From positions 186,001-250,000 of IMG/VR virus record IMGVR_UViG_3300031857_000002: 64,000 nt of DNA. The stretch is one strand, 5' to 3'. Below the pieces are notes generated by a model that saw nothing but the letters and a program-made list of their open reading frames with translations, searched no databases and was not told the origin of the DNA. Shown here one piece after another: positions 8,455 to 20,666 of this stretch (positions are counted from its first letter, which is position 1; each line of letters begins with the position of its first letter). Both the position numbers and the translations under genes were made by a program.

Positions 8455-9117
8455 TTAGTTACGAGCCTGTATAGGCAGGGTCTTTCGAACCAGTTGTGGG
8501 CATGCTAGATTTATAAACAGCGCATCTTTTTCGTTGTCATGATCCACAAAGTAATTTGAAGGGATCCACATTCGTTGGCCGTTTAGTAACATTTTAAATC
8601 CTGGGCTGGGACGAAATTGATCTGCTCGTGTGAAAAAGTATTTCTTTATGAGTTCTCTTTGCGACTCATCTAGATAGCGTTCACGAAAATAGGTTCTAAA
8701 CTTGTGTTGGGGATTGTTTAGCACAACACAATCTGCGGGCAAACACACATCAGCTTGCTTGTGCTCAACTAACTTTGTGCCCGGATGTGCTACAACCGCC
8801 GCAAAATCTTCTGGAGTGTTGGTGTAGAACCACATGGTGTTGTTGCACACCACTTTCTTAAAGGGATTCTTGATGGCCAGCAAGAGATCACATACTTCGT
8901 GCAATCGTTCTTGATCACGATCTGATATAACTGTTCTAGTGCCACTGCTACGCCAATTCTGCAGATAGGTGTTACGCCAATAGATAGTGTTGTCAATACT
9001 TTTGTGGCTTAACTGGCGCATCATATTGCCTTCGGGAATCCACCATATCAAGCAGTGATAATACTGCTTGTAATATGGTTCGCTACGTTGCTCAATGTTT
9101 ACGTCAATATCAAACAT
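8455..9117 (-). CDS. Hypothetical protein
   Basis: Long ORF; start reassigned to MFDIDVN at 9117, which overlaps the clpA stop. Confidence 0.6.
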   Translation of the reverse strand: MFDIDVNIEQRSEPYYKQYYHCLIWWIPEGNMMRQLSHKSIDNTIYWRNTYLQNWRSSGTRTVISDRDQERLHEVCDLLLAIKNPFKKVVCNNTMWFYTNTPEDFAAVVAHPGTKLVEHKQADVCLPADCVVLNNPQHKFRTYFRERYLDESQRELIKKYFFTRADQFRPSPGFKMLLNGQRMWIPSNYFVDHDNEKDALFINLACPQLVRKTLPIQARN

Positions 9118-11371
9118 CTGGGAATCGGATAATACCGTCATCGTCCACCACAGGAATGATCTGTGCCACAGATTCAAAATGTACTGCGTCGTCTTGCATT
9201 GTGACAAACACATCACAGTCACTCAGTCGATCAAACAAGATCTTTTTAGATAGTGGTACCTTGATCAGCTCGTCAATCTTACGTGCCAAGGGTCTAGCAC
9301 CCATCTTGGGATCGTAGCCCTTGTCGGCCAACATGTCTATGACCTCTTCGCTGAGTACAAGTTTGATGTGTTTTTCATCCAAACTGGCCTTGAGCTGATC
9401 TGCAAACTTGATCACAATCTTCTTGATGGCCAATCGGTCCAGCTTGTTGAATCTGCAGATTTGATCAATACGATTACGCAGTTCTGGCTTGAAGAACTCT
9501 TTCATAGCTTTGTCTTCGTTACCAGTTTTTTCCTGACTTCCAAAACCAATAGCATTGCTTTCGTTGTCTCTAGCACCCAAGTTTGAAGTCAGGATAATAA
9601 TGGTGTTCTTAACATCCACACGCTTGCCTGCTGAACTAGTGATGTGCCCTTCGTCCAGCATCTGTAGCAAGATGTTGCTGACATCAGGGTGTGCTTTTTC
9701 AATTTCATCAAACAAGATGATTGAAAAAGGGTTCTTGGTAAGATCACTGATCAGCTTGCCGCCGCCAACGTTGCCATCTTCAAAGCCCACATAGCCTGGG
9801 GGTGCACCAATCAAACTTGATACTGTGTGTTTTTCCTGGTACTCACTCATGTCGTACTTCAACAGTTTCATGTCTAGGTTATCACTCAGCAGTTTGGCCA
9901 GTTCTGTTTTGCCTGTGCCTGTTGGACCCAAGAACAAGAAACTCGCCATAGGGCGAGTTGTTGCACCAATGCCTGCAAAGTTGATGTACACACGTTCCAG
10001 CACAGCATCCACTGCTTGATCCTGTCCGTAGAGCTTTTGCTTGATGTTGCTTTCAAGATCTATAATATTTGCTGAGCGTTCGTTCTGCAGTCGGTCCATT
10101 GGAATGCCTGCTACCTTGCTGACCTGTGCCATGATCATGTCTCGAGTGACAGTTACCAGGCCAGCATCCTTCACACGCTGTCGGGCACAAGCACCATCCA
10201 ACAAGTCAATACTCTTGTCAGGATTCTTCTTGTCATGAATATAACGTCCACTCAGTTCCACAGCCGCGGCCATTGCTTCTGTGTCGATCATCACATTGTG
10301 AAACTTCTCCAGTCGCGGACTCAGGCCAATAAGGATCTGTTCTGTGGTTGACGCATTGGGCTCGTCAATGCTCAAGCGATGGAATCTGCGCATCAACGCA
10401 CGATCTTTTTCAAATGACTCGTAGTATTCTTCCCATGTTGTGCTTGCAATAACTTTGAGGTTGCCCTTGGTGATTGCAGGTTTGAGCATGTTGGCAAAGT
10501 CCAGATTGCTTGACCCCGATGATCCTGCACCCTTCATGGTGTGTGCTTCGTCCACAAACAAGATACAGTTCTTCTTGGCTTCTAGTGCGGCAATAACTTG
10601 CTTGAACTTTTCTTCAAACTCACCGCGATACTTAGATCCTGCCAGTAATGAACCAATCTCCAGTCCCCACACTTCGTGACCTTTCAAGAACTCGGGCACG
10701 TTGTTAGCATGTATTTCTTGTGCAAGTCCGTCAATGATGGCAGTTTTGCCCACGCCTGGATCACCTACCATGAGCACATTGGCCTTGAATCGACGTGCCA
10801 ACACAGTGATCATGTCTTCTAGTTCTGCATTACGACCAATCAAGGGCTCCAGTTGATTCTTTGCGGCCATTGCTGAGATGTTGGTGCAATGCTCTTCCAA
10901 GATGTCTGTGGCCTGTTGTACATTCATTTTCACACTCTCGGGCTGGTGATTGCTTTGATAGAACTCAATAAACTCGGCCTTGCGGATACCATACTTGAGC
11001 AAGAAGTAGTGTGCATGACTGTTGTTTTCGGCCATGATGCTCAAGTACACATCAATCAGGCTCATGCTTCTGCGACCTGTAAACATGACCTGTACATTGG
11101 CACGATTAAATATGCGTTCCAGAGCTTGTGTTTTACGAGGTTGTAAATTTTCTGAAGCACTGATCAAATTGATCTGGCTGTCCAAGTAAGCATTGAGCTC
11201 TGTGTCCAGCAGATCTGCATCTGCACCAAATTTGTCTACCACACGTCTGAACGGCAAGTGGCGTAGCATGCCCAACAACAAGTGTTCTGTGACCACATAT
11301 TCGTGACACTTTTCTCTGGCCAATTTAACGGCTGCTTCGACCACTTGTTCAATTTCGGGATTGTTCTGCAT
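9110..11371 (-). CDS. clpA: ATP-dependent Clp protease ATP-binding subunit, ClpA-type
   Basis: Clp N-domain; Walker A GDPGVGKT and GPTGTGKT; pore loops KYRGEFE and GYVG; IGF loop; no ClpB M-domain. Start MQNNPE follows an AGGA RBS. Confidence 0.93.
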   Translation of the reverse strand: MQNNPEIEQVVEAAVKLAREKCHEYVVTEHLLLGMLRHLPFRRVVDKFGADADLLDTELNAYLDSQINLISASENLQPRKTQALERIFNRANVQVMFTGRRSMSLIDVYLSIMAENNSHAHYFLLKYGIRKAEFIEFYQSNHQPESVKMNVQQATDILEEHCTNISAMAAKNQLEPLIGRNAELEDMITVLARRFKANVLMVGDPGVGKTAIIDGLAQEIHANNVPEFLKGHEVWGLEIGSLLAGSKYRGEFEEKFKQVIAALEAKKNCILFVDEAHTMKGAGSSGSSNLDFANMLKPAITKGNLKVIASTTWEEYYESFEKDRALMRRFHRLSIDEPNASTTEQILIGLSPRLEKFHNVMIDTEAMAAAVELSGRYIHDKKNPDKSIDLLDGACARQRVKDAGLVTVTRDMIMAQVSKVAGIPMDRLQNERSANIIDLESNIKQKLYGQDQAVDAVLERVYINFAGIGATTRPMASFLFLGPTGTGKTELAKLLSDNLDMKLLKYDMSEYQEKHTVSSLIGAPPGYVGFEDGNVGGGKLISDLTKNPFSIILFDEIEKAHPDVSNILLQMLDEGHITSSAGKRVDVKNTIIILTSNLGARDNESNAIGFGSQEKTGNEDKAMKEFFKPELRNRIDQICRFNKLDRLAIKKIVIKFADQLKASLDEKHIKLVLSEEVIDMLADKGYDPKMGARPLARKIDELIKVPLSKKILFDRLSDCDVFVTMQDDAVHFESVAQIIPVVDDDGIIRFPDV

Positions 11372-11401
11372 GGGGTTCCTTTGTAAAACTATTATTGTGT
11401 T

Positions 11402-11430
11402 ATTATACTTGATGTTTTGATCACAAGCAA
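11402..11430 (-). promoter_or_regulatory. sigma70-type promoter upstream of clpA
   Basis: TTGCTT-N17-TATAAT on minus strand. Confidence 0.55.
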
Positions 11431-11444
11431 CCAATACGAAATAT

Positions 11445-12227
11445 TTATTCGCGGTATTTTTCGATTGCTTCTACCAATTCAGGTGCTAGTGTGGCAGGAA
11501 TTCGAGCATTTAATTTCACAAACATGTCACCTTGTGCGCCTCTACGATCTCTGAGTCCTTGACTGCGTAGTCTCAGCACAGCATTGGCTTGACAACGCGG
11601 TGGAACCTTGACTGTGAGACTGTGCCCCAAAATGTTGTTCACTGTGATGTCTGTACCCAAAATCAAATCCCACACTGAGATGCTGTGGTCCACAGTTAGG
11701 TTAAGCCCATCACGATGCCAAGCAGGATCTGGACGTATTCTAAATGTGATCACAAGATCCTGACCTCCTGGTGCAAGTCCGCCGTATTGGATATTGTCCC
11801 CGTCATTGAGCCCTAGAGGCACATCCAGTTCTACTGTGCTTTGTCCCTGTGATGTGGCCACTGCTACTGCTTTCTTTCCACCTTGGGCCACGTCTAGTAG
11901 GGAGATGTACAAGGTCATGCGCACATGATTCCTGCGTGGGTGCTGTTGCCCAAACCCGCCGCCGCCAAACATTTGGCTAAAAATATCATTGAACTGTGGT
12001 CCACCACCAAATCCTCCAAAGCCCCCAAACTGGGGTTGTGGGTTGTCGTACTCGGCACGTTTTTGTTCGTCACCTAGCACAGCATAGGCAGCTTGGATGG
12101 CCTGGAACTTGGCAGTATCACCACCCTTGTCCGGATGATGCTGACTGGCCAGTTTTCTAAAGGCCTGTTTGATTTCAGCGGCTGTGGCAGTTCGTGGGAC
12201 GCCTAGTGCGGCGTAGTGATCGGTCAT
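11445..12227 (-). CDS. dnaJ: DnaJ-class co-chaperone (CbpA-like, no Zn finger)
   Basis: J-domain with HPD (HHPDKGG), G/F-rich linker and DnaJ C-terminal domain. Confidence 0.92.
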
Positions 12228-12229
12228 AA

Positions 12230-12263
12230 AAAAATCCTGTACACATAATTATACAGGATTTTT
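12230..12263 (-). terminator. Hairpin/intrinsic terminator overlapping the dnaJ promoter and RBS
   Basis: Perfect 12-bp inverted repeat AAAAATCCTGTA (12230-12241) / TACAGGATTTTT (12252-12263); the U-tract runs into the dnaJ ATG. Confidence 0.7.
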
Positions 12264-12276
12264 GGGGTGGTGTCAA
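12248..12276 (-). promoter_or_regulatory. Consensus sigma70 promoter for dnaJ
   Basis: TTGACA-N17-TATAAT. Confidence 0.8.
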
Positions 12277-12497: not shown

Positions 12498-13061
12498 TTA
12501 TCTTTCTGGATAGAAGTCAGGCAAAGGCGGCGCCAGTTTGCCCCCAAAGCCTGCGGTTACTTGGCCTGTGGAGCCAAAGTTGTTGCCCATTGGCGGTGTA
12601 GCACCATATCCGGGTTGATATCCGCCAGCGGCTGAAACAGGGGAGGTGCCCCAACTGGGTGCTGGTGTATAACCGGTACCGGGCTGGTTGAGGTTTGGCG
12701 AAGGTTGGCCAAATGTTGTAGTGACGCTTTGTGATACGGGTTGTAGTCCTGTGTTGGCATTGCTTGCTCCATTGAGTTTCTCTTGTGTGCGCCCATACGC
12801 ACTAACACCTAGAACAGCACCCATGGCCACATGGAACAGGCCACCGCCTTGTAGTGTAATAGGTACCCATTGACGGAATGCGTCATTGGCTGCTTGTGTT
12901 TCCCAGAACTGTACCACTGTAAACATGATGGGGAATATAAAGAAGTCGGCTAGACAACAGAACATGTACATGATGGCCATCATGGGGCGCCATTTTCTAG
13001 TCATCCAATCATCGTCGGGCTTTTTCTTTTCTACTTTTGCTTCTTTTGTTTTTGTAATCAT
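12498..13061 (-). CDS. Putative holin-like membrane protein
   Basis: KWRPMMAIMYM...GGLFHVAMGAVLG hydrophobic segments; lies in the lysis operon. Confidence 0.5.
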   Translation of the reverse strand: MITKTKEAKVEKKKPDDDWMTRKWRPMMAIMYMFCCLADFFIFPIMFTVVQFWETQAANDAFRQWVPITLQGGGLFHVAMGAVLGVSAYGRTQEKLNGASNANTGLQPVSQSVTTTFGQPSPNLNQPGTGYTPAPSWGTSPVSAAGGYQPGYGATPPMGNNFGSTGQVTAGFGGKLAPPLPDFYPER

Positions 13062-13079
13062 TACAGGCTCCTTGTTATT

Positions 13080-13631
13080 TTATAGTGGTGCCCAGAGCCA
13101 AATGGCCTGACTCATCAGCACGACAGCAAATCCGCCCACTCCCAAGCTAGTGGTAAACAAGCTGTTTTTAACAGCAAGAATGCTAGCTGTCAATAACACA
13201 ATAGCGATCTGTAACAAACTGCCTGCGTATGTGTACCAGGGTGATCGTTGCTTGGCCACAGCACGTTCTGCTTCCAGTGCTCGGGCCTTGGCCAGCAGTT
13301 CTTTCTTGCCTTCGCCTGTGGCAGGTTCGCTTTCGTAACGTGCAATTTTCTTTTCTAGTGCTTCAATTTTCTTGGTATCTTTTTTGGCCACAGCATCATC
13401 CAAGGCCATTTCTGCTAGTGTGCCTTTGATGCTCTTGGCTTGATAAAAGGCATAGGTATTGTTGGCTTCAATGGTGTTGTTTAGTACTTTGCCAGAGTTG
13501 CCACTGGCCATGTATGTGTTGATGGCCAACAAGGCAGCAAACACAACAATGACCAGGCCAGCCTTGTCTTTGATTTGTGCTTCACGCTCTGACCGTGATA
13601 GGGGTTTTGTTTCTTGTTTTTGTTCTGTCAT
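13080..13631 (-). CDS. DUF4337-like membrane protein
   Basis: N-terminal TM, AFYQAKSIK motif, coiled coil and two C-terminal TMs. Confidence 0.65.
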   Translation of the reverse strand: MTEQKQETKPLSRSEREAQIKDKAGLVIVVFAALLAINTYMASGNSGKVLNNTIEANNTYAFYQAKSIKGTLAEMALDDAVAKKDTKKIEALEKKIARYESEPATGEGKKELLAKARALEAERAVAKQRSPWYTYAGSLLQIAIVLLTASILAVKNSLFTTSLGVGGFAVVLMSQAIWLWAPL

Positions 13632-13650: not shown

Positions 13651-14397
13651 CTAGAACGGATTTAGTGCTGAACTGACTACACTGCCTGTGTTTACAATTG
13701 TAAGATTATTAGTTGAACTATCTTTTAAGAAATTCTCGTCGTTGGGAGTATTCAACAACAACTGTGTATTTGTAATAGCGGTGAGGTTAGTAGTAGGCGG
13801 AGTAAAGTATGTAGTACCCACAGATGTACCAAAAGCGTAAACTAATGATCCTTTTACAATTCTTATATTAGAGATATTACCATTAAATCTGTTGCTGCCG
13901 CTGTCTGAGCCAATGGTCCAAGGTAATGCACTTGACCCCATTTGTGCAGTTCCTACACCTGCACCTGTGGTGCTGGCCCTGCACACTCCATTAATAAACA
14001 AACTATAGCTAGTACCACTTCTCATAGTACAAATATGTTGCCAAGAATTTTGTGCCAGTGTTCCAGCAACTGACGTAATGCTGTTGAAAGGACTGCCTGT
14101 AGTAGGAGTATCGTTCCAGTTGGCTCGCACACGCCCGTCAGTGTTAGCTTGTCCTACAATCATGTAAGCGTTACCGTTTTGCATTACTAGCATATCGCTG
14201 GTACCACTAGCTAAGTTAGTTGGATACGCCCATAATTCTAGTGTAAAATCATTGGTGCCAAAGTTAAATCCAACGTCAGCAGGTGCTGTTAGATATTTTG
14301 CCGACGCACTACTGAATACTGCACTTCCAACTGGCACGAAGCTTTGTATTGTAATTCCTGCGCCTACTGAGATTCCTGGTCCTACTATGATTGCCAT
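13651..14397 (-). CDS. LamG/concanavalin A-like lectin-domain virion protein
   Basis: FTLELWAY, WQHICTMR, FNGNISNIRIVKG. Confidence 0.75.
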   Translation of the reverse strand: MAIIVGPGISVGAGITIQSFVPVGSAVFSSASAKYLTAPADVGFNFGTNDFTLELWAYPTNLASGTSDMLVMQNGNAYMIVGQANTDGRVRANWNDTPTTGSPFNSITSVAGTLAQNSWQHICTMRSGTSYSLFINGVCRASTTGAGVGTAQMGSSALPWTIGSDSGSNRFNGNISNIRIVKGSLVYAFGTSVGTTYFTPPTTNLTAITNTQLLLNTPNDENFLKDSSTNNLTIVNTGSVVSSALNPF

Positions 14398-14400
14398 ATT

Positions 14401-15120
14401 TTAATATCCAAATCTTGATTTATATTGTGTGTACAAGCCTTGTACATCTGACAAGGTCAATACACCGTTGTAAACTTTGACAAATCCTATGTCACCAGTT
14501 TGCGCTTCTGAACCCGATGATCTGCTGAACAATCTCAAGTTGTTGAAGCCACCGCCACTGGCATTGGTCACAGCAAATGATGTGCCCACTGGCTGTGAGC
14601 TTGTTGCTGTGTACAGTTGTCCCAGACTGGTTGAAGTGTTCCAAGTAGCCCAGCCAAAGTGCCAGGCAAGGTCCGCACCCGATGCTGGCAAGTTAACTGC
14701 GTAGTTGGGAAAGAATGTATCTGGGTTGCCGTTGTAAAGTCCCATGAGCCAGTCTTTTTGTGCTTCAACCTGTGTGTTCAGCAATCTGCCTGAGGCCGCA
14801 GTTGAACGCTTGTAGGCCATAAACACTGTGTAACTTTGCCCTGTGGTCCAGTTAGGCCCACCATAGATGTAGTCTGCACTTGTGGCACCTGAACCAGTCA
14901 TTCTAAAAACGCCACCATTGTCTGAGGCCCAGGCTATCCTACTGGTAGTATTGGCCACTGACAGTGTGTAGGTGCCAGTGGCATCCTTTGTGCCGTTTAC
15001 AGGCACAGCAGAGTAGTTGGCAGCGTCTAAGTCATATACCAACGTTGCTGATGGTGAGAATCCTTGAGTGATAGTTATACCACCACCTACCTGGACTCCT
15101 GCTCCGATTACTATTGGCAT
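14401..15120 (-). CDS. LamG-like lectin-domain virion protein
   Basis: Shares the N-terminal IxxGxGVxVGxGITI pattern with 13651-14397; LDAANY and IGFVKVYNGVLT. Confidence 0.65.
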   Translation of the reverse strand: MPIVIGAGVQVGGGITITQGFSPSATLVYDLDAANYSAVPVNGTKDATGTYTLSVANTTSRIAWASDNGGVFRMTGSGATSADYIYGGPNWTTGQSYTVFMAYKRSTAASGRLLNTQVEAQKDWLMGLYNGNPDTFFPNYAVNLPASGADLAWHFGWATWNTSTSLGQLYTATSSQPVGTSFAVTNASGGGFNNLRLFSRSSGSEAQTGDIGFVKVYNGVLTLSDVQGLYTQYKSRFGY

Positions 15121-15738
15121 TTAAACTCCCATTACATGCAGTGCATGTTCATAATGATGAATACGATCTTCTAGGCCAATGTATCCACCGTTGATGGCTC
15201 GAGTGAGTCCACGAATATCGCCTGCGTCAGCAAAGCGATTTAAATTGTTTTGTTCCCAGAACCAGCAGGCACTTTGTGCGGCGCCTTCAAATGTAGCAAG
15301 ATACTCAGCGGCTTCTTCTTCTGAAATGCCTAGACTGCCTGCAAAGAATGTGTAGTTGTCTTTGCCTGTTAACTGTATCAAGCCACGACCGCAGTAGCGC
15401 CAGCCATCTCCGGACTCTTCTGGACCGTTGCCCATGCGACTGGCATACACTCTGTTGGCAATCTTTTCTGGCTTGTTGGCATACTGTGCAGCCAAGGCAT
15501 CTGTGGGGAAATACTTGGGAAATACCTTTCGCAAACTAGCGGCTTTGTAGTTCAAGTTCTCTTTGATGAACACAAAGTTGCCTGACTCATGTGCGCACTG
15601 TGCAATAAAAGCTGCCACCCGCTGTGGTGTGTTGATTTCGTAGTCATCCAACAATTGTTCTAGTGCATCATACCAGTGATCAATGTGTGGATTTTTAACC
15701 ATTTGTTTTAGTTGTTCTCGTGTGAGTATCGTGCTCAT
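15121..15738 (-). CDS. Glycoside hydrolase family 19 endolysin
   Basis: AAFIAQCAHES, YCGRGLIQLTGKDNY, RAINGGYIGLEDR. Confidence 0.9.
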   Translation of the reverse strand: MSTILTREQLKQMVKNPHIDHWYDALEQLLDDYEINTPQRVAAFIAQCAHESGNFVFIKENLNYKAASLRKVFPKYFPTDALAAQYANKPEKIANRVYASRMGNGPEESGDGWRYCGRGLIQLTGKDNYTFFAGSLGISEEEAAEYLATFEGAAQSACWFWEQNNLNRFADAGDIRGLTRAINGGYIGLEDRIHHYEHALHVMGV

Positions 15739-15770
15739 TTAACGGCTCCTTGTTTGTATTTAATCTTTTG

Positions 15771-16412
15771 TTATCTACCCATTACCCAGGGATCATTGAT
15801 AACTGGGGTACCATCTGCCCTGCGCATGAAATTACCACCATGCATATCCCAACGATATCCACGAGCTTTGCCAATTTTCATCAAGTCATCCAGAGTGGCA
15901 ACCATCTGTACCACTCCTTTGGCACCCAGTGCTTTCTCCAGTAGTGCATAATCCCCTTGTCTAAAATTTTTCAAGTATCTCACAAACGCACTCACGCTGA
16001 TACCCTTGTGTTCAATATAACTCCTAGACATCCAGCCTAGATCATCCAAGGCACGTCTCATTGGGCCTTGAGTTTTTTTTAAAGGTTCAGTACGAATCAT
16101 TAGATAGCGATTGTCATTCCACATAAAACTGTCATGACCATAAAACCTTGGCAACAAAGGATTGTCACTGTGCTTGCTACAATAATCGTACCAGGCAAAA
16201 AACATTTTTTGATCAGCACTGAAGTTTTGACGATTGCCTTGAGTGCCAAATACCTTTAGCACCAGGCCAGTACTAGGCTCCAAGTACGCAGTTTGATCCA
16301 CTCCTTTACCCAGGAATTGATAACCCTTGGCTTCTAGCTCAGATCTGATGCCTTTGTCTGTGGTTGAAAATTCTTCTAGATTTTGCTCGTCAATGAACTC
16401 CTGTGCTCTCAT
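15771..16412 (-). CDS. Protein kinase-like fold protein with capsid-targeting-like N-terminus
   Basis: LGKGVDQTAY (Gly loop), VLKV (catalytic Lys), DMHGGNFM (catalytic loop), INDP (DFG equivalent); starts MRAQEFIDE. Confidence 0.7.
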   Translation of the reverse strand: MRAQEFIDEQNLEEFSTTDKGIRSELEAKGYQFLGKGVDQTAYLEPSTGLVLKVFGTQGNRQNFSADQKMFFAWYDYCSKHSDNPLLPRFYGHDSFMWNDNRYLMIRTEPLKKTQGPMRRALDDLGWMSRSYIEHKGISVSAFVRYLKNFRQGDYALLEKALGAKGVVQMVATLDDLMKIGKARGYRWDMHGGNFMRRADGTPVINDPWVMGR

Positions 16413-17032
16413 TTGGCAACACTTTCAAATATTTGTTTTTGTGCTCGATACCATTCCTGCCAGGCTTTTAGTTTTTCTGCGTTTTCGTGGCAGGCGCCGT
16501 AGTTGTCGACGACTGTTTCAAGGAGTTGACTGGCTTTAATGTCGCTGGGGGTTCCATCAACTGACTCGGCACCTCGGGCCACTTCATTACGACTGGCACT
16601 GTCGTGGAGCACGATGCTAGACTTAGGCAAAGAGCACTGGCTATCAAGCTGTGCGCCAGCAACTTCTCTAATGATTTCTCGGTTTGCATATACAGTTTCC
16701 TTTACAACTTTGATCTTGGTAACAAATTTGGTTTCAATTACGGTGTTGACTTCACGACTTCGAGCTTCGGCAATCTGAACTTTTTCTTCTAGTTCTTTGA
16801 TTTTGGCCAGCCATTTTTCTTCATTGCCGCGCCAGCCAAAAAAGTAAGCACCCACGCACAGCAGTAACACACCCACTAGTTCAGCAGGCATGCGGTACTG
16901 CATCATTATAGGAATCCAACGCACCAGCTTAGAAGCAATGTACAACAGCAAGCCTGCCGCAAATATCGCATAGGTCAACATGACAAAAATGCTGTCAGGC
17001 AACAAGCTAAACATCCACACCAACTGGTCCAT
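16409..17032 (-). CDS. i-spanin (Rz-like)
   Basis: N-terminal TMs, coiled coil, C-terminal LHDSAS...VVDNYGACHENAEKL; embedded lipoprotein gene. Confidence 0.75.
   Translation of the reverse strand: MDQLVWMFSLLPDSIFVMLTYAIFAAGLLLYIASKLVRWIPIMMQYRMPAELVGVLLLCVGAYFFGWRGNEEKWLAKIKELEEKVQIAEARSREVNTVIETKFVTKIKVVKETVYANREIIREVAGAQLDSQCSLPKSSIVLHDSASRNEVARGAESVDGTPSDIKASQLLETVVDNYGACHENAEKLKAWQEWYRAQKQIFESVAK
16468..16689 (-). CDS. o-spanin (Rz1-like lipoprotein) embedded in the +1 frame of the i-spanin
   Basis: Lipobox LASC followed by a Pro-rich segment, STTVPVVMKWPEVPSQLMEPP. Confidence 0.7.
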   Translation of the reverse strand: MQTEKSLEKLLAHSLIASALCLSLASCSTTVPVVMKWPEVPSQLMEPPATLKPVNSLKQSSTTTAPATKTQKN

Positions 17033-17084
17033 ATCAGTCCTTTATATAGATGTATTTATTGGATCTGTAGGTTTGATGTAGCAG

Positions 17085-17666
17085 TTAAAAGTCCATGTTA
17101 CATTGAGCTACAAGCTGCCAGTTTTTTAAATATCTGTACGCATCTGACAATCGATTGTGTTCCAGCTGATCCCGCATGAACACACTGAATTCATCAGGAT
17201 CCAAATCAATGTTGATCAGTTGATCAGCGTACCAGTCAACCCCGGTAGTAAAGTAATATTGCCAATGAAAATGCATTACCTTAATAAACACTGTGTTAAG
17301 TCCAAGATTTTCAATATCTTGCTGATGGTGCTGTACGCCGTCCACATTCCAATAACGTGCTAATGCGTCCACTAGATTGCTTTTTATCTTGATGATTTTG
17401 CGGTTGGGATATGTTTTTCTTATCAAATCTGAATTCACAGCGTGAGTATAAGCAATGGGAATACTGTCGTTGATCTCACCGTGATCACTCAGTGTTGGAT
17501 ACCGATATTGATTGGCCGGATTGTGATGTATCAAATGATCATGGCCAATCAATGGAACATTGTGATAATTGCCCTGAAGATTCAGATCAAAAGATTTGCC
17601 CAGCAAATGATGTATAAATCTAAAGCCGCCTGCTCCAGGAAAGTAACTTACAACAACAGGATCCAT
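17085..17666 (-). CDS. Hypothetical, sulfotransferase-like N-terminal loop (PGAGG-F family)
   Basis: VVVSYFPGAGGFRF start, similar to 24470-25357 and 33026-33655. Confidence 0.45.
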   Translation of the reverse strand: MDPVVVSYFPGAGGFRFIHHLLGKSFDLNLQGNYHNVPLIGHDHLIHHNPANQYRYPTLSDHGEINDSIPIAYTHAVNSDLIRKTYPNRKIIKIKSNLVDALARYWNVDGVQHHQQDIENLGLNTVFIKVMHFHWQYYFTTGVDWYADQLINIDLDPDEFSVFMRDQLEHNRLSDAYRYLKNWQLVAQCNMDF

Positions 17667-18724
17667 TAGTATACAAATAAATTCTGGTCACCCCGCTCGG
17701 GAAATAAATCAACTCTACTGTCATTGCGACGTATGTCCAAGGTTAGACAGTGCAGTCCACCGTCCCAGAATGTTCTTGTTCTAAATGGCATGGGGTGTGC
17801 GGTAATGCCATGCTGTTCTAGCGCACGAAATACACCTTCATTTTCCCCTACCATTAGCACGTTCTTTTCATCAATCACAAGACAGTTTAGTTCAAAGTAG
17901 GTTTCTGTGTAGTCGCCTACCCAGTCTTGTGCGTGTTTTATCACATGATCGTTAAATTTTGCCGAATTTGATACTCCGGGCAGCCACCATTTGCCGTTGT
18001 GCCATGGCCCTGTTCTACTGGATTTTTTTTTGTGGCGTAGAAATTCTGGTTGGTTTATGTTTATTTTTTCCCAGCCAGGGAATGTACGATCGTAATCGTC
18101 AAAGTACTCGCTGGTCAGTAATAATCCAGGCTTGAGCACAGCAAAACATCCATCCACATGTCCGCCATTGTTTAACATATGCAACCGATAATCTTTAAAA
18201 GTTTTTTGTATATATTCAACGTCTACATGCTCGTTGTGCCAATAACTGTCTAGGTAAAAGTCGCGACCCACACGTACAGTATTGGCACCGTTGATATGCC
18301 CGGCTCCAGGAATGTTTGGTCGATCAACTATGCGGCTGCCAAGGTCCTTGACATAGTCAGCAACAGCATCAGCCCAGGCTCTGTGATCCCAGGTTGCTCC
18401 AAACAATGTGTTGCCAAACACCAGGAAATGATCACGTGGTGTAATCATGGGCTTGCATAGTTGCCCTGCACTAGTGGGATGACCTTGCGGCATCAAAAAA
18501 TCTTCAATACGATCGTAACGGGGTCTGCGAACTTGCACACCGTGTTCTTCTAGTTTGCGTTGTATTACTGCAAGATCCTCTTGAGTCTTTTGAGTAATTT
18601 CATAAAAGATATCCTGTACTTCTGACTCTAGATGATCATAAAAATGTGCTGGATAACAGTTGCCCAACCATACTTCTTCAAGTCGGCCCCAGTTGGTGAA
18701 ACTGTTTATCTTTGGCAGCGTCAT
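17666..18724 (-). CDS. Amidinotransferase (glycine/inosamine-phosphate amidinotransferase family)
   Basis: NSFTNWGRLEEVWLG, ITPRD, GHVDG, FWDGGLHCLTLDIRR (catalytic Cys). Confidence 0.88.
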   Translation of the reverse strand: MTLPKINSFTNWGRLEEVWLGNCYPAHFYDHLESEVQDIFYEITQKTQEDLAVIQRKLEEHGVQVRRPRYDRIEDFLMPQGHPTSAGQLCKPMITPRDHFLVFGNTLFGATWDHRAWADAVADYVKDLGSRIVDRPNIPGAGHINGANTVRVGRDFYLDSYWHNEHVDVEYIQKTFKDYRLHMLNNGGHVDGCFAVLKPGLLLTSEYFDDYDRTFPGWEKININQPEFLRHKKKSSRTGPWHNGKWWLPGVSNSAKFNDHVIKHAQDWVGDYTETYFELNCLVIDEKNVLMVGENEGVFRALEQHGITAHPMPFRTRTFWDGGLHCLTLDIRRNDSRVDLFPERGDQNLFVY

Positions 18725-19515
18725 TCTAATCCCAGTTCTTTTCTAATAGCAGTGGCCGAAATTGAATGAGTTGCAGAATCAAATGATTCTTGTTCTATCT
18801 TGTAGCCCACGTCTCGACCGTAGGTGATATTTACTATGTTGGGCACAACTTGTATTTCGTATTGACCTTGATATAACATGTCTAGATCTCTACGTATATA
18901 ATTCCTCACCTGTTCTATAGCAAAGGGATTTGATCCTTGCCAGCCTTGACAATCTCTAATTTGAATTACCACTTGACCTGTTTTTGCAATGGCACGTTCA
19001 AACAACTTGCGATGTCCTGCATGCCATGGTTGCCAACGACCTAGCATTTGCACAGTTTCTTTCTGCCAATCGAATACAGGGCGTCTGCGATTATCTAAGA
19101 TATGTGCGGCCACAAACTCGCCCCACTTCTCACCATGCTGTTCAGTGATGCGGAAATCATATTGCTCAGGCGGAACGAATGCTTTATTAGTATCTTCGTA
19201 GCGGCCCTGATCAATGGTGTCAACCCATATGGTCCAGTCTGCTTTGAAATTGTTGCGCATGTCAACCAAGGGAGCCACAAAGTCACAGATCACATAGTCT
19301 ACATCTGTCATTGCATCTGCCAGTTCGCGCATACGTAAACTCTGACGTATACGGCCTGCTTCACTGAAATCCCAGTCGTTGTATTTTTTACGTACATCGT
19401 CGGCATTTAACCAACCCACACGTTTCTTTTCTGCTTGCAAGTGGTCTACAATGTGTTGTGCCAGGTATGTTTTGCCGGCCCCTGGCAGGCCCATGATTAA
19501 AATACGTTGTGTCAT
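18721..19515 (-). CDS. cysC: Adenylylsulfate kinase (CysC-like) fused to a C-terminal HxGH nucleotidyltransferase domain
   Basis: GLPGAGKT P-loop, LNADDVRK, DFSEAGRIRQ, ICDFVAP; then GRWQPWHAGH. Confidence 0.8.
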   Translation of the reverse strand: MTQRILIMGLPGAGKTYLAQHIVDHLQAEKKRVGWLNADDVRKKYNDWDFSEAGRIRQSLRMRELADAMTDVDYVICDFVAPLVDMRNNFKADWTIWVDTIDQGRYEDTNKAFVPPEQYDFRITEQHGEKWGEFVAAHILDNRRRPVFDWQKETVQMLGRWQPWHAGHRKLFERAIAKTGQVVIQIRDCQGWQGSNPFAIEQVRNYIRRDLDMLYQGQYEIQVVPNIVNITYGRDVGYKIEQESFDSATHSISATAIRKELGLE

Positions 19516-19520
19516 GCTAT

Positions 19521-19533
19521 TATTTACTAAGTA
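19521..19533. promoter_or_regulatory. Back-to-back TAAATA (minus) / TAAGTA (plus) late-type promoter pair
   Basis: Sequence CAT-gctat-TATTTA-c-TAAGTA-atttt-ATG; each motif is 5 nt from a divergent start codon. Confidence 0.55.
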
Positions 19534-19538
19534 ATTTT

Positions 19539-20666
19539 ATGAATGTATTAATTTTAACTCCGGACCGCGTTGGCAGCACTTTATTACAACGTGTGATCAC
19601 TGTGTACATGCAATCGCACACTTACAATCGCCCTGTGATTAACTTACACGAACTCACAAACGGATTAATGAAATACTACAGTCCTGTGTTCAATCAAGAA
19701 GTGCTGGGCAAACCAACTGACCGTCCTTGGGGATATTACCAGTCACTCGACGAAATACTGGAGCATTTAAACAGCACAGATCACTACAAGACCGCACGAT
19801 TGGCACATTATCATATTTTAAATCGTCAAGATCCATTGGCTAATCAGGTGCCTTTTTATCAATACCTAAATGATAACTTTTTTATAATCAGCGCCCAAAG
19901 GAAAAATCTACTAGAACATGCACTAAGTTGGTGTATTCAAGGACATTCAAAAAAGTTAAATGTTTACACACATCAAGAAAAGATTGATACATTTGCTGAC
20001 ATATATCAAAATAGAATCACAGTTGATGTGAATGTAATGATAACGTATCTCAACAAGTATGTGAACTACTTGAACTGGGTTGACAATCATTTTACAGTGA
20101 ATTCATACTTTGAATATGAAACACACATGCCTAAAATTGAAGAATATATACTGGGTTTGGATATATTTGGTGGACAACAAAAAAAATCATGGCATGACAC
20201 GTTTGGCATTGAGTTTCAAGACTGGAATCGATATCATTATCTTGCCAGTGACATGAGCGGCATAAGCAAACAGTTACCAAGTCCAGACAACTTAAAAATC
20301 ACGTTTGATTCTCAAGACCAGTTGGACAGTGTAGATCTAGTACCTGTGTTTAATAAAAATGCAATTCATAATAGTCTAAGCATTGGCGACAAACAGTTTT
20401 TAAAACAACATACTAGCAAATACATCAGCAGTTACAAAGCAATTGATGAGTTGGTTCAGCATAAGATAATGGTCACAGGCATTCCCATTAAACTGCAAAC
20501 CATGATGGAAAAAAGCCGACTGATACGCAATTTTGATCAATGCGCAGAAGCATACAATGACTGGGTCAAGCAACGTGGAATAGGCGATCCTTATACCAAT
20601 ACTGATATCAAGAAAATTGCACTAGATGAAATTAGCACCTGGCATTCGATGCCAAGGCTGGAATAA
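19539..20666 (+). CDS. Sulfotransferase-like protein
   Basis: TPDRVGSTLLQR (5'-PSB-like loop) and RKNLLEHALSW (3'-PB-like); start reassigned to MNVLIL. Confidence 0.55.
   Translation: MNVLILTPDRVGSTLLQRVITVYMQSHTYNRPVINLHELTNGLMKYYSPVFNQEVLGKPTDRPWGYYQSLDEILEHLNSTDHYKTARLAHYHILNRQDPLANQVPFYQYLNDNFFIISAQRKNLLEHALSWCIQGHSKKLNVYTHQEKIDTFADIYQNRITVDVNVMITYLNKYVNYLNWVDNHFTVNSYFEYETHMPKIEEYILGLDIFGGQQKKSWHDTFGIEFQDWNRYHYLASDMSGISKQLPSPDNLKITFDSQDQLDSVDLVPVFNKNAIHNSLSIGDKQFLKQHTSKYISSYKAIDELVQHKIMVTGIPIKLQTMMEKSRLIRNFDQCAEAYNDWVKQRGIGDPYTNTDIKKIALDEISTWHSMPRLE

What the first reader, a model, noticed from the sequence alone, without database searches (positions are those of the whole stretch)
15771..16412. 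Kinase-fold gene with a capsid tag inserted inside the lysis cassette
Seen: a minimal kinase (Gly loop, VLKV, DMHGGN, NDP) coupled by an ATGA overlap to the i-spanin and upstream of the GH19 endolysin, starting MRAQEFIDE. Knowledge: T7 gp0.7 is a phage kinase that phosphorylates host proteins early. Inference: made late with the lysis genes, packaged, and active on injection, possibly against host defence.
Basis: partly seen in the sequence, partly recalled or inferred. Interest (0 to 1): 0.6.

Follow-up and report, generated by a model that had tools for sequence, protein, structure and literature searches.

The report
Capsid-tagged T7-like kinase in jumbo phage

Summary
Window 15771-16412 (-) is a 213-aa ORF. 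It overlaps the i-spanin stop by ATGA and lies 32 nt upstream of a GH19 endolysin.

**Kinase.** A confident AF2 model (pLDDT 89.5) matches only kinases. A family profile aligns to T7 gp0.7 (hhalign 94.9%, E 4.7e-8), motif for motif: Gly loop, VLK, D-x-H-G-G-N, and DPW for T7's DPV. The T7 shut-off domain is absent.

**Tag.** MRAQEFI(T/D)E heads five otherwise unrelated proteins in this genome and 28 proteins (19 homology groups) across five related genomes. The exact peptide is encoded at 67 IMG/VR sites. It shares QEFIxE with T4's capsid targeting sequence MKTYQEFIAE. The genome has a T4-type head module with a gp21-family protease.

**Timing.** A T4-late-like motif (nTAAATAc), found before portal and baseplate genes, lies 27 nt upstream of the spanin-kinase pair. 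A gp55-like sigma factor is present.

**Lysis context.** This is incidental. Most relatives lack it, and one contig joins spanin directly to endolysin without the kinase.

Packaging, cleavage, injection and an anti-defence role are inferred, not shown. No cultured phage carries this family.

Verdict: a new variant combining two known kinds. Interest 0.62.

The parts
15771..16412 (-). 213-aa T7K-like minimal protein kinase ORF
   Evidence: ORF. AF2 pLDDT 89.5. Kinase-only fold matches. hhalign to T7 gp0.7 94.9%, E 4.7e-8. 118 metagenomic homologue clusters.
16386..16412 (-). Codons 1-9, MRAQEFIDE: capsid-targeting-like N-terminal tag ending in I-x-E
   Evidence: Shared by 5 ORFs in this genome and 28 in five genomes. 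Only these 27 nt are conserved between the tagged genes, with synonymous differences. Residues 1-15 are disordered in the model. T4 CTS is MKTYQEFIAE.
16371..16379 (-). L12-E13-E14: second hydrophobic-x-Glu motif, a possible additional protease site at the start of the folded domain
   Evidence: E14 is invariant and L-x-E is kept in all 38 aligned homologues, although the spacing from the tag varies.
16284..16313 (-). Gly-rich loop LGKGVDQTAY (residues 34-43)
   Evidence: G37, D39, Q40 and A42 invariant. Aligned to T7 gp0.7 LGNGHFSAAY.
16254..16256 (-). K53, the beta-3 (VAIK-type) lysine in VLKV
   Evidence: Invariant. Aligned to VIKV of T7 gp0.7. Codon read.
15831..15848 (-). Catalytic loop D189-M-H-G-G-N194
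   Evidence: D189 and N194 invariant. Aligned to FDMHSGN of T7 gp0.7.
15786..15794 (-). D207-P208-W209, the DFG-equivalent (T7K family has DPV). The protein ends 4 residues later.
   Evidence: D207 and P208 invariant. Aligned to ITDPV of T7 gp0.7. The DPV motif is described in PMC13645617.
16409..16412 (-). ATGA overlap: i-spanin stop TGA and kinase start ATG
   Evidence: Read directly.
16409..17032 (-). i-spanin (Rz-like), co-transcribed upstream gene
   Evidence: PHROG 4952 E 4e-28; PHROG 2466 and 5369 Rz-like.
16468..16689 (-). Embedded o-spanin (Rz1-like) with lipobox LASC
   Evidence: PHROG 31473 and 456. Sequence.
17052..17059 (-). Late-like promoter motif ATAAATAC, 27 nt upstream of the i-spanin start
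   Evidence: Motif family of 61 sites, 39 of them directly upstream of genes, including portal and baseplate. Sequence read. gp55-like sigma in the genome.
15756..15763 (-). Late-like promoter motif TTAAATAC in the 32-nt gap between kinase stop and endolysin start
15121..15738 (-). GH19-type endolysin
   Evidence: PHROG 181 E 3.5e-78; Pfam PF00182, 22.3 bits.
12498..13631 (-). DUF4337 membrane protein (13080-13631) and 3TM holin (12498-13061), the rest of the lysis cassette
   Evidence: Pfam PF14235 E 9e-32; PF11351, 25.1 bits. They lie adjacent to the endolysin in relatives L007 and L008.

Best explanation
The gene encodes a stand-alone, catalytically competent protein kinase of the T7 gp0.7 (T7K) type, without T7K's C-terminal shut-off domain.

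Its first nine residues, MRAQEFIDE, are a capsid-targeting propeptide of the T4 kind. The proposed mechanism has five steps:
1. The gene is transcribed late with the spanin gene, from a T4-late-like promoter.
2. The tag takes the protein into the scaffolding core of the prohead.
3. The gp21-family prohead protease removes the tag after Glu9 (I-D-E), and possibly also after Glu14 (L-E-E).
4. The basic mature enzyme (pI about 9.3) stays in the head with the DNA.
5. It is ejected with the DNA into the next host. There it can phosphorylate host proteins before any phage gene is expressed. This would give the same early burst that T7 obtains by expressing gene 0.7 first, probably for take-over or to disarm defences.

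Shown here: the fold, the homology to T7K, the conserved catalytic residues, the portable tag, the T4-type head module and protease, and the late-type promoter motif.

Inferred: packaging, cleavage, ejection, kinase activity and substrates.
For: **Kinase**
- AF2 pLDDT 89.5, pTM 0.84.
- Foldseek PDB hits are all kinases.
- BFVD hits are T7-like phage kinases, TM 0.55-0.65.
- The VIA-align wide search gives Z 8.8 and its top rows are almost all protein kinases.
- PHROG 15752, E 6.9e-4.
- hhalign to T7 gp0.7: 94.9%, E 4.7e-8, with all four motifs aligned.
- Catalytic residues are invariant in 38 homologues.

**Tag**
- 5 ORFs in the genome against 0 in shuffles.
- Only the 27 coding nt are conserved, with synonymous changes.
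- 28 tagged proteins in 5 genomes have the consensus M-R-A-x-E-F-I-T-E and fall into 19 homology groups.
- The exact tag is encoded at 67 IMG/VR sites on 13 cargo groups.
- The cargo includes other modifying-enzyme types: a Zeta-toxin/AAA_33 P-loop kinase and weak GNAT matches.
- T4 CTS is MKTYQEFIAE. Targeting depends on residues 4 and 7, processing on residues 8 and 10.
- Residues 1-15 are disordered in the model.

**Machinery**
- Peptidase_S77 and Gp23 family matches.
- Gene order is that of T4 genes 20-67-68-21-22-23.
- 4 of 5 related records hit S77, 3 of them above the cut-off.

**Timing**
- The late-like motif stands before portal, baseplate and virion genes, and before the spanin-kinase pair.
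- The same motif lies within 100 nt upstream of the kinase in 8 of 42 related loci, against about 1.3 expected.
- A gp55-like sigma factor is present.
- No early-type promoter is nearby.
Against: - No experimental datum exists for any member. The family is purely metagenomic.
- The nearest cultured jumbo phages (PA5oct, Phosso, Vibrio 2.275.O, XaC1, Turkey5) have neither the kinase nor the tag above background. No virion proteome can therefore be consulted.
- The T4 late consensus TATAAATA itself is absent from the window. The late class of the variant motif is inferred from the genes it precedes.
- Early-motif genes show no Ser/Thr/Tyr depletion of the kind reported for T7-like phages. This is a weak test.
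- The PHROG match is weak, and PDB TM-scores are modest at 0.35-0.44.
Confidence: 0.55

Rival explanations
1. It is a late cytoplasmic kinase that is not packaged. It is made with the lysis genes and acts in the producing cell, for example on lysis timing, superinfection or late abortive-infection systems. The shared N-terminal peptide would serve another purpose, such as translation initiation, stability or binding to some other phage factor.
For: ATGA coupling to the i-spanin and a late-like promoter. The spanin-kinase linkage is kept down to 47% identity in L010. There is no direct evidence of packaging.
Against: - The tag matches the T4 CTS in its functional positions (F, I-x-E) and sits on 19 unrelated protein groups.
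- The linkage to lysis genes is absent in most of the 70 related loci.
- A relative lacks the kinase between spanin and endolysin.
- Upstream nucleotides are not conserved, so the tag is not a shared translation-initiation region.
Confidence: 0.2
2. It is a small-molecule kinase of the aminoglycoside/choline-kinase type. It would phosphorylate a metabolite, antibiotic, lipid or nucleotide rather than proteins, whether or not it is packaged.
For: The D-x-H-x-x-N catalytic loop and the lack of an activation segment are also features of APH-like kinases. APH(2'')-Ia appears among the Foldseek hits at E 2.6e-4.
Against: The best sequence-profile relative is the T7 protein kinase, with its DP(V/W) motif. 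The closest predicted structures are T7-like phage protein kinases. Top PDB rows are protein kinases.
Confidence: 0.08
3. It is a packaged internal protein whose kinase fold is only a scaffold (a pseudokinase). It would act by binding DNA or a host factor, like the basic T4 internal proteins.
For: The mature part is basic, pI 9.3. T4 IPs act by binding, not catalysis.
Against: All catalytic residues (K53, D189, N194, D207) and the Gly loop are invariant across 38 homologues down to 37% identity. This argues for retained catalysis.
Confidence: 0.07

Closest known systems
Phage T7 gp0.7 protein kinase (T7K; PHROG 15752)
   Same: Same minimal kinase architecture and motifs: Gly loop, V-[LI]-K, D-M-H-x-G-N, and DP[VW] in place of DFG, with no activation segment. 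Like the jumbophage T7K homologues mentioned in PMC13645617, it lacks the shut-off domain.
   Different: Only remote similarity (PHROG E 6.9e-4; 13-19% identity to T7-like kinases in fold matches). It has no C-terminal DNA-binding shut-off domain. It carries an N-terminal capsid-type tag. It sits behind a late-type promoter, whereas T7 gene 0.7 is among the first genes expressed. The early-gene S/T/Y depletion reported for T7-like phages is not seen here.
T4 internal proteins IPI/IPII/IPIII and their capsid targeting sequence (CTS)
   Same: A 9-10 residue N-terminal peptide shared by otherwise unrelated proteins. The core QEFIxE is identical to T4 MKTYQEFIAE. It ends in a hydrophobic-x-Glu site suited to a gp21-type protease. 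The genome has the T4 head module. The cargo genes are variable and partly clustered, like T4 IP genes (PMC9026906, PMC3012670).
   Different: The tag is one residue shorter and begins MRA rather than MKTY. The cargo here is an enzyme of 23 kDa rather than a small binding protein. Nothing has been shown biochemically. The tag is not found above background in the cultured relatives examined.
T4 Alt ADP-ribosyltransferase
   Same: A host-modifying enzyme made late, built into the prohead core, trimmed by gp21 and injected with the DNA to act before phage transcription (PMC9026906, PMC5512222). It is the best functional analogue of the proposed mechanism.
   Different: Different chemistry (ADP-ribosylation rather than phosphorylation) and a different fold. 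Alt's propeptide is not the IP-type CTS.
Kinase domains of phage 'polyvalent proteins' (Iyer et al. 2017, PMC5512222)
   Same: Protein-kinase-superfamily domains with a truncated C-terminal part, predicted to be packaged in the virion and injected.
   Different: Those are domains inside giant multidomain proteins of Verrucomicrobia/Bacteroidetes phages, a separate monophyletic group. Their delivery is inferred from fusion to or linkage with head proteins, not from a cleavable CTS.

Membership tests
T7K-like phage protein kinases (T7 gp0.7, PHROG 15752) | Protein-kinase-like fold with Gly-rich loop and beta-3 lysine | tested here: met
   AF2 model. Only kinases among the best fold matches. G35/G37 and K53 conserved.
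T7K-like phage protein kinases (T7 gp0.7, PHROG 15752) | Catalytic loop D-M-H-x-G-N and DP(V) motif replacing DFG | tested here: met
   WDMHGGN and NDPW align to FDMHSGN and TDPV of T7 gp0.7. The DPV motif is described in PMC13645617, with the valine less conserved in jumbophage homologues.
T7K-like phage protein kinases (T7 gp0.7, PHROG 15752) | Significant sequence-profile match to the family | tested here: met
   PHROG 15752 E 6.9e-4 over residues 22-208. hhalign of the family profile against T7 gp0.7: probability 94.9%, E 4.7e-8. No Pfam match.
T7K-like phage protein kinases (T7 gp0.7, PHROG 15752) | C-terminal shut-off (DNA-binding) domain | tested here: not met
   The protein ends 4 residues after DPW. 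The paper reports the same loss in jumbophage and prophage homologues.
T7K-like phage protein kinases (T7 gp0.7, PHROG 15752) | Early expression | tested here: not met
   A late-like promoter motif lies upstream and no early-type TGnTATAAT motif is present. This is motif-based inference only.
T7K-like phage protein kinases (T7 gp0.7, PHROG 15752) | Ser/Thr/Tyr phosphotransfer to many proteins | not testable with these tools
   Needs a kinase assay or phosphoproteomics.
T4-type CTS-bearing internal (ejected) head proteins | N-terminal peptide of about 10 aa shared by otherwise unrelated proteins of one phage | tested here: met
   5 ORFs in G000, 15 in G002, 5 in G001. 19 homology groups after removal of the tag.
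T4-type CTS-bearing internal (ejected) head proteins | Similarity to the T4 CTS at the targeting (aromatic) and processing (I-x-E) positions | tested here: met
   MRAQEFI(T/D)E against MKTYQEFIAE. Roles of residues 4, 7, 8 and 10 come from PMC9026906.
T4-type CTS-bearing internal (ejected) head proteins | Genome encodes a gp21-family prohead protease and a T4-type core/scaffold/MCP module | tested here: met
   PF03420, 81.5 bits. PF07068 E 8e-98. Gene order portal, 72-aa, acidic 280-aa, protease, scaffold, MCP.
T4-type CTS-bearing internal (ejected) head proteins | Late expression | tested here: inconclusive
   The variant late motif lies 27 nt upstream of the operon. The same motif stands before structural genes, and a gp55-like sigma is present. 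There are no transcript time-course data.
T4-type CTS-bearing internal (ejected) head proteins | Present in virions with the tag cleaved off; ejected with the DNA | not testable with these tools
   No cultured relative carries the family.
Lysis cassette component | Conserved linkage to holin, endolysin or spanin genes, or a lysis-type domain | tested here: not met
   Linkage is seen only in L007/L008 and partly in L010, out of 70 loci. A kinase-less spanin-endolysin junction exists in a related contig. The protein has no membrane or muralytic domain.

The most novel reading that the evidence does not exclude
A clade of uncultured freshwater T4-related jumbo phages uses a portable nine-residue capsid-targeting peptide (M-R-A-x-E-F-I-T-E) to load a changeable arsenal of at least 19 unrelated protein families into the head. 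The cargo includes a T7K-like protein kinase, a Zeta-toxin-like P-loop kinase and GNAT-like proteins. The kinase would be the first case of a T7K-type kinase delivered pre-made with the DNA. Host defence and transcription proteins would then be phosphorylated before any phage gene is expressed.
Probability: 0.45. Interest if true: 0.75.

Novelty: new variant of a known kind. Interest (0 to 1): 0.62.

Why it matters
T7's kinase was recently shown to disarm many bacterial defences by a burst of promiscuous phosphorylation at the very start of infection (PMC13645617). If a T4-type jumbo phage ships such a kinase inside its head, the enzyme acts even earlier and does not depend on transcription. 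That would be a new route of counter-defence.

It would also add protein phosphorylation to the chemistries known for injected head enzymes, such as T4 Alt's ADP-ribosylation.

The tag itself is useful. It gives a simple sequence rule for listing candidate ejected effectors in hundreds of uncultured phage genomes: 67 exact sites in IMG/VR, and 13-19 cargo families already. It also suggests that the T4 capsid-targeting mechanism is much older and more widespread than the T-even phages.

Tried and rejected
- **Pfam on the kinase:** no family.
- **Profile against PDB sequences:** nothing meaningful.
- **tblastn against 50,697 phage records:** only a partial 28.6% match, to a gene of a T4-like Rhizobium phage that lies next to an annotated 'putative protein kinase'.
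- **megablast of the region:** no match.
- **T4 late consensus TATAAATA:** absent from the window. It was replaced by a de novo motif search.
- **Generic sigma-70 and terminator scan:** not above shuffles.
- **Search for experimental support in cultured relatives:** PA5oct annotates the proteins detected in its virion by ESI-MS/MS. Its single pattern match is internal to a gene. Phosso, XaC1 and Turkey5 have 1-3 pattern matches, near background. Vibrio 2.275.O and RHph_I1_18 have none. The Turkey5 match is not a gene start. The kinase profile finds nothing in these five genomes.
- **Ser/Thr/Tyr depletion of early-motif genes**, the footprint reported for T7-like phages: not seen, p = 0.79.
- **Tag co-variation within 20-kb loci:** only three loci (L026, L059, L060) had a second tagged ORF, because tagged genes are dispersed. 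This was solved by fetching whole records.
- **RNA runs:** they hold only contigs of relatives. They show no transcript ends or timing.
- **Considered and rejected:** that the tag is a duplicated 5' gene end or promoter (upstream is not conserved, and codons differ synonymously), and that the tagged proteins are paralogues (19 groups).
- **Not run:** the large representative protein search (not needed) and complex prediction (the receptor of the tag is unknown).

Full report
**What is there**

The window is bases 186001-250000 of a 320,175-bp IMG/VR virus record, 92% complete by CheckV. The finding's coordinates hold a 213-aa ORF on the minus strand, 15771..16412.

Its ATG overlaps the TGA of the upstream gene as ATGA at 16409-16412. 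That upstream gene (16409-17032) matches Rz-like i-spanin families. It contains, in another frame, a 73-aa ORF with a lipobox (16468-16689) that matches Rz1-like families.

Thirty-two bases downstream of the kinase stop starts a GH19-type endolysin (15121-15738; PHROG 181, E 3.5e-78). Further downstream lie two LamG-like genes, a DUF4337 membrane protein and a 3TM holin.

**The kinase**

Pfam finds nothing. PHROGs gives a weak match to the T7 gp0.7 kinase family over residues 22-208 (E 6.9e-4).

The word search found 118 homologue clusters. All are metagenomic and unnamed, many on contigs of 140-355 kb.

In an alignment of 38 of them, down to 37% identity, these positions are invariant: G37, D39, Q40, A42, K53, E109, D189, N194, D207 and P208.

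The AlphaFold2 model built on this alignment is confident (pLDDT 89.5, pTM 0.84), except for residues 1-15, which score below 50. Fold searches gave:
- Foldseek against the PDB: only kinases (GCN2, WNK1, PknB, APH(2'')), E about 1e-4, TM 0.35-0.44.
- Foldseek against BFVD: protein kinases of T7-like phages (IME278, SK1, Q19, NahiliMali, fPS-53), TM 0.55-0.65, plus an uncharacterised RaK2 protein.
- The Foldseek-independent search: Z 8.8 at best, with the top rows almost all protein kinases.

A profile of the family aligned to T7 gp0.7 itself gives probability 94.9% and E 4.7e-8, with the motifs in register:
- KGYxxLGxGVDQxAY with AGFKMLGNGHFSAAY
- VLKV with VIKV
- WDMHGGNFM with FDMHSGNIM
- PVINDPW with PYITDPV

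The last motif is the DPV motif. A 2026 study describes it as the T7K family's replacement for DFG, with the valine less conserved in jumbophage homologues, which have also lost the shut-off domain (PMC13645617).

The protein here ends four residues after DPW. It has no activation segment and no shut-off domain. I conclude that it is a distant, stand-alone member of the T7K-like kinases, with its catalytic residues under purifying selection.

**The tag**

I scanned all candidate starts of the genome. Five ORFs begin with MRAQEFITE or a one- or two-residue variant:
- genome 320-703
- genome 703-1068
- genome 183749-184360
- genome 201771-202412, the kinase
- genome 311030-311389

All are at true ORF N-termini. 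Five shuffled genomes gave no start with 6 or more of 9 matches.

At the DNA level only the 27 coding bases are alike. The codons differ synonymously and the upstream sequences are unrelated. Selection is therefore on the peptide, not on a repeated DNA element.

I fetched four related records of 160-318 kb that also encode the kinase. The same kind of N-terminus heads 15 ORFs in G002, eight of them in one tandem cluster. It heads 5 in G001, three of them adjacent and including the kinase. It heads 1-2 in each of the two fragments.

The 28 tagged proteins give the consensus M-R-A-x-E-F-I-T-E, followed by unrelated sequence. With the tag removed they fall into 19 homology groups. The kinase is the only group present in all five genomes.

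A back-translated pattern for the exact peptide matches 67 sites in IMG/VR. My rough estimate of the number expected by chance is below one. All sites lie at or near ORF starts, on 13 cargo groups.

The cargo with recognisable domains includes an AAA_33/Zeta-toxin-type P-loop kinase, DUF6267 and weak GNAT matches.

**Why this is probably a capsid-targeting signal**

The T4 capsid targeting sequence is the first ten residues of IPIII, MKTYQEFIAE. Residues 4 and 7 matter for targeting, and residues 8 and 10 for cleavage by the gp21 prohead protease. Fused to foreign proteins, it carries them into the head, from which they are delivered into the infected cell (PMC9026906, PMC10229621). The tag here shares QEFIxE with it and ends in the same hydrophobic-x-Glu site.

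The genome has the matching machinery:
- a Peptidase_S77 (gp21-family) protease
- a Gp23-family capsid protein
- a head gene order of portal, 72-aa protein, acidic 280-aa protein, protease, scaffold, capsid protein, as in T4 genes 20-67-68-21-22-23

Four of the five related records also hit the protease family, three of them above the curated cut-off.

The disordered N-terminus of the model and an invariant L-x-E at residues 12-14 fit a propeptide that is cut off. The mature protein is basic, pI 9.3.

**Timing**

The T4 late consensus TATAAATA is absent from the window. A de novo k-mer search of intergenic regions found two motif families:
- An extended -10 type, TTTGCTATAATACTTGTATAGT, stands before clusters of small genes.
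- A second motif, [ATG]TAAATA[CA], occurs 61 times. Of these, 39 are within 120 nt upstream of a same-strand start.

The genes preceded by the second motif include the portal, baseplate wedge proteins and virion structural proteins. This motif lies 27 nt upstream of the i-spanin start (17052-17059) and 25 nt upstream of the endolysin start (15756-15763).

The genome encodes a gp55-like sigma factor. In 8 of 42 related loci the same motif lies within 100 nt upstream of the kinase, against about 1.3 expected. Late expression is thus a reasonable inference, but it is not shown.

**The lysis context**

The order spanin-kinase-endolysin is kept only in the closest relatives (L007 and L008, 73% identity). 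The spanin-kinase pair is also kept in L010. Most of the 70 related loci show no such neighbours.

The phage occurs in lake and freshwater metagenomes from a dozen or more studies. A 300-nt contig of one run aligns to the spanin end (16584-16424) and to the endolysin start (15740-15611), with only nine other letters between. A relative therefore lacks the 683 bases that hold the kinase gene. DNA runs X4 and X8 carry the gene.

The kinase is thus an accessory cassette that sits in the lysis cluster of this lineage. I see no reason to give it a role in lysis.

**What is known and what is new**

T7K-type kinases and the T4 CTS are both well known. Injected host-modifying enzymes are also known (T4 Alt), and injected kinase domains have been predicted in polyvalent proteins (PMC5512222).

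I found no open-text report of this tag or of a CTS-tagged or virion-borne T7K-like kinase.

The nearest cultured jumbo phages have 64-71% identical capsid proteins: Phosso, PA5oct, Vibrio 2.275.O, XaC1 and Turkey5. They have neither the kinase nor the tag above background. No virion proteome can therefore be used as a check.

A footprint reported for T7-like phages, depletion of Ser/Thr/Tyr in early proteins, is not seen here.

**Verdict**

Fold, family, tag, machinery and a late-type promoter are shown by computation. Packaging, cleavage, injection, activity and an anti-defence role are inferred.
- I rate it a new variant of known kinds, with interest 0.62.
Only genetic code 11 was used.

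Noticed in passing
window 9110-12276: A perfect sigma-70 consensus promoter (TTGACA-17-TATAAT, 12276-12248, minus strand) precedes a phage-encoded DnaJ-like gene (11445-12227). A ClpB-like AAA+ chaperone gene (9110-11434) follows.
   Followed up: partly
window 51978-64794 (and genome 125-132 kb, 295 kb): A highly conserved early-type promoter, TTTGCTATAATACTTGTATAGT, recurs 15-40 nt upstream of many small genes. It probably marks the early gene clusters.
   Followed up: partly
window 13651-15120: Two LamG/concanavalin-like genes lie between the endolysin and the DUF4337/holin genes. In the relatives L007 and L008 the endolysin is followed directly by the DUF4337 and holin homologues, so these two genes look like another insertion in the lysis cluster.
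   Followed up: partly
window 15740/16424 junction (run X19): A related contig joins the spanin end to the endolysin start with 9 other letters and no kinase gene. This is natural presence/absence variation of the kinase cassette. Whether it arose by insertion or deletion is not resolved.
   Followed up: partly
G002 (IMGVR_UViG_3300025015_000009) 58761-69214 and 17096-17773: A tandem cluster of eight genes all start with the tag (MRVNEVVTE and the like), reminiscent of T4 internal-protein gene clusters. There is also a second, distant tagged kinase paralogue. The closer kinase orthologue in that genome has a degenerate N-terminus.
   Followed up: partly
genome 183749-184360 (L005:1250-1861) and G001 134543-135760: Another tagged protein family shows weak GNAT acetyltransferase matches (E 0.009 and 6e-4). 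In G001 it lies next to the kinase. A BFVD structural neighbour of the kinase is a 412-aa protein named as NAT_SF domain-containing.
   Followed up: no
window 16409-17032: The i-spanin ORF is 207 aa, but the family matches start at residue 50. The first 45 residues form an extra hydrophobic segment of unknown role.
   Followed up: no
window 17085-20666: Upstream of the lysis cluster lie an APS-kinase-like P-loop protein (18721-19515) and three proteins without family matches. They may form a modification pathway.
   Followed up: no
genome 43748-44590 (L131:10748-11590): The acidic 280-aa protein between portal and protease starts MNRFEQLIEYV. This resembles the tag (E-Q-L-I-E) and may mark a core protein that uses the same targeting and cleavage logic.
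   Followed up: no
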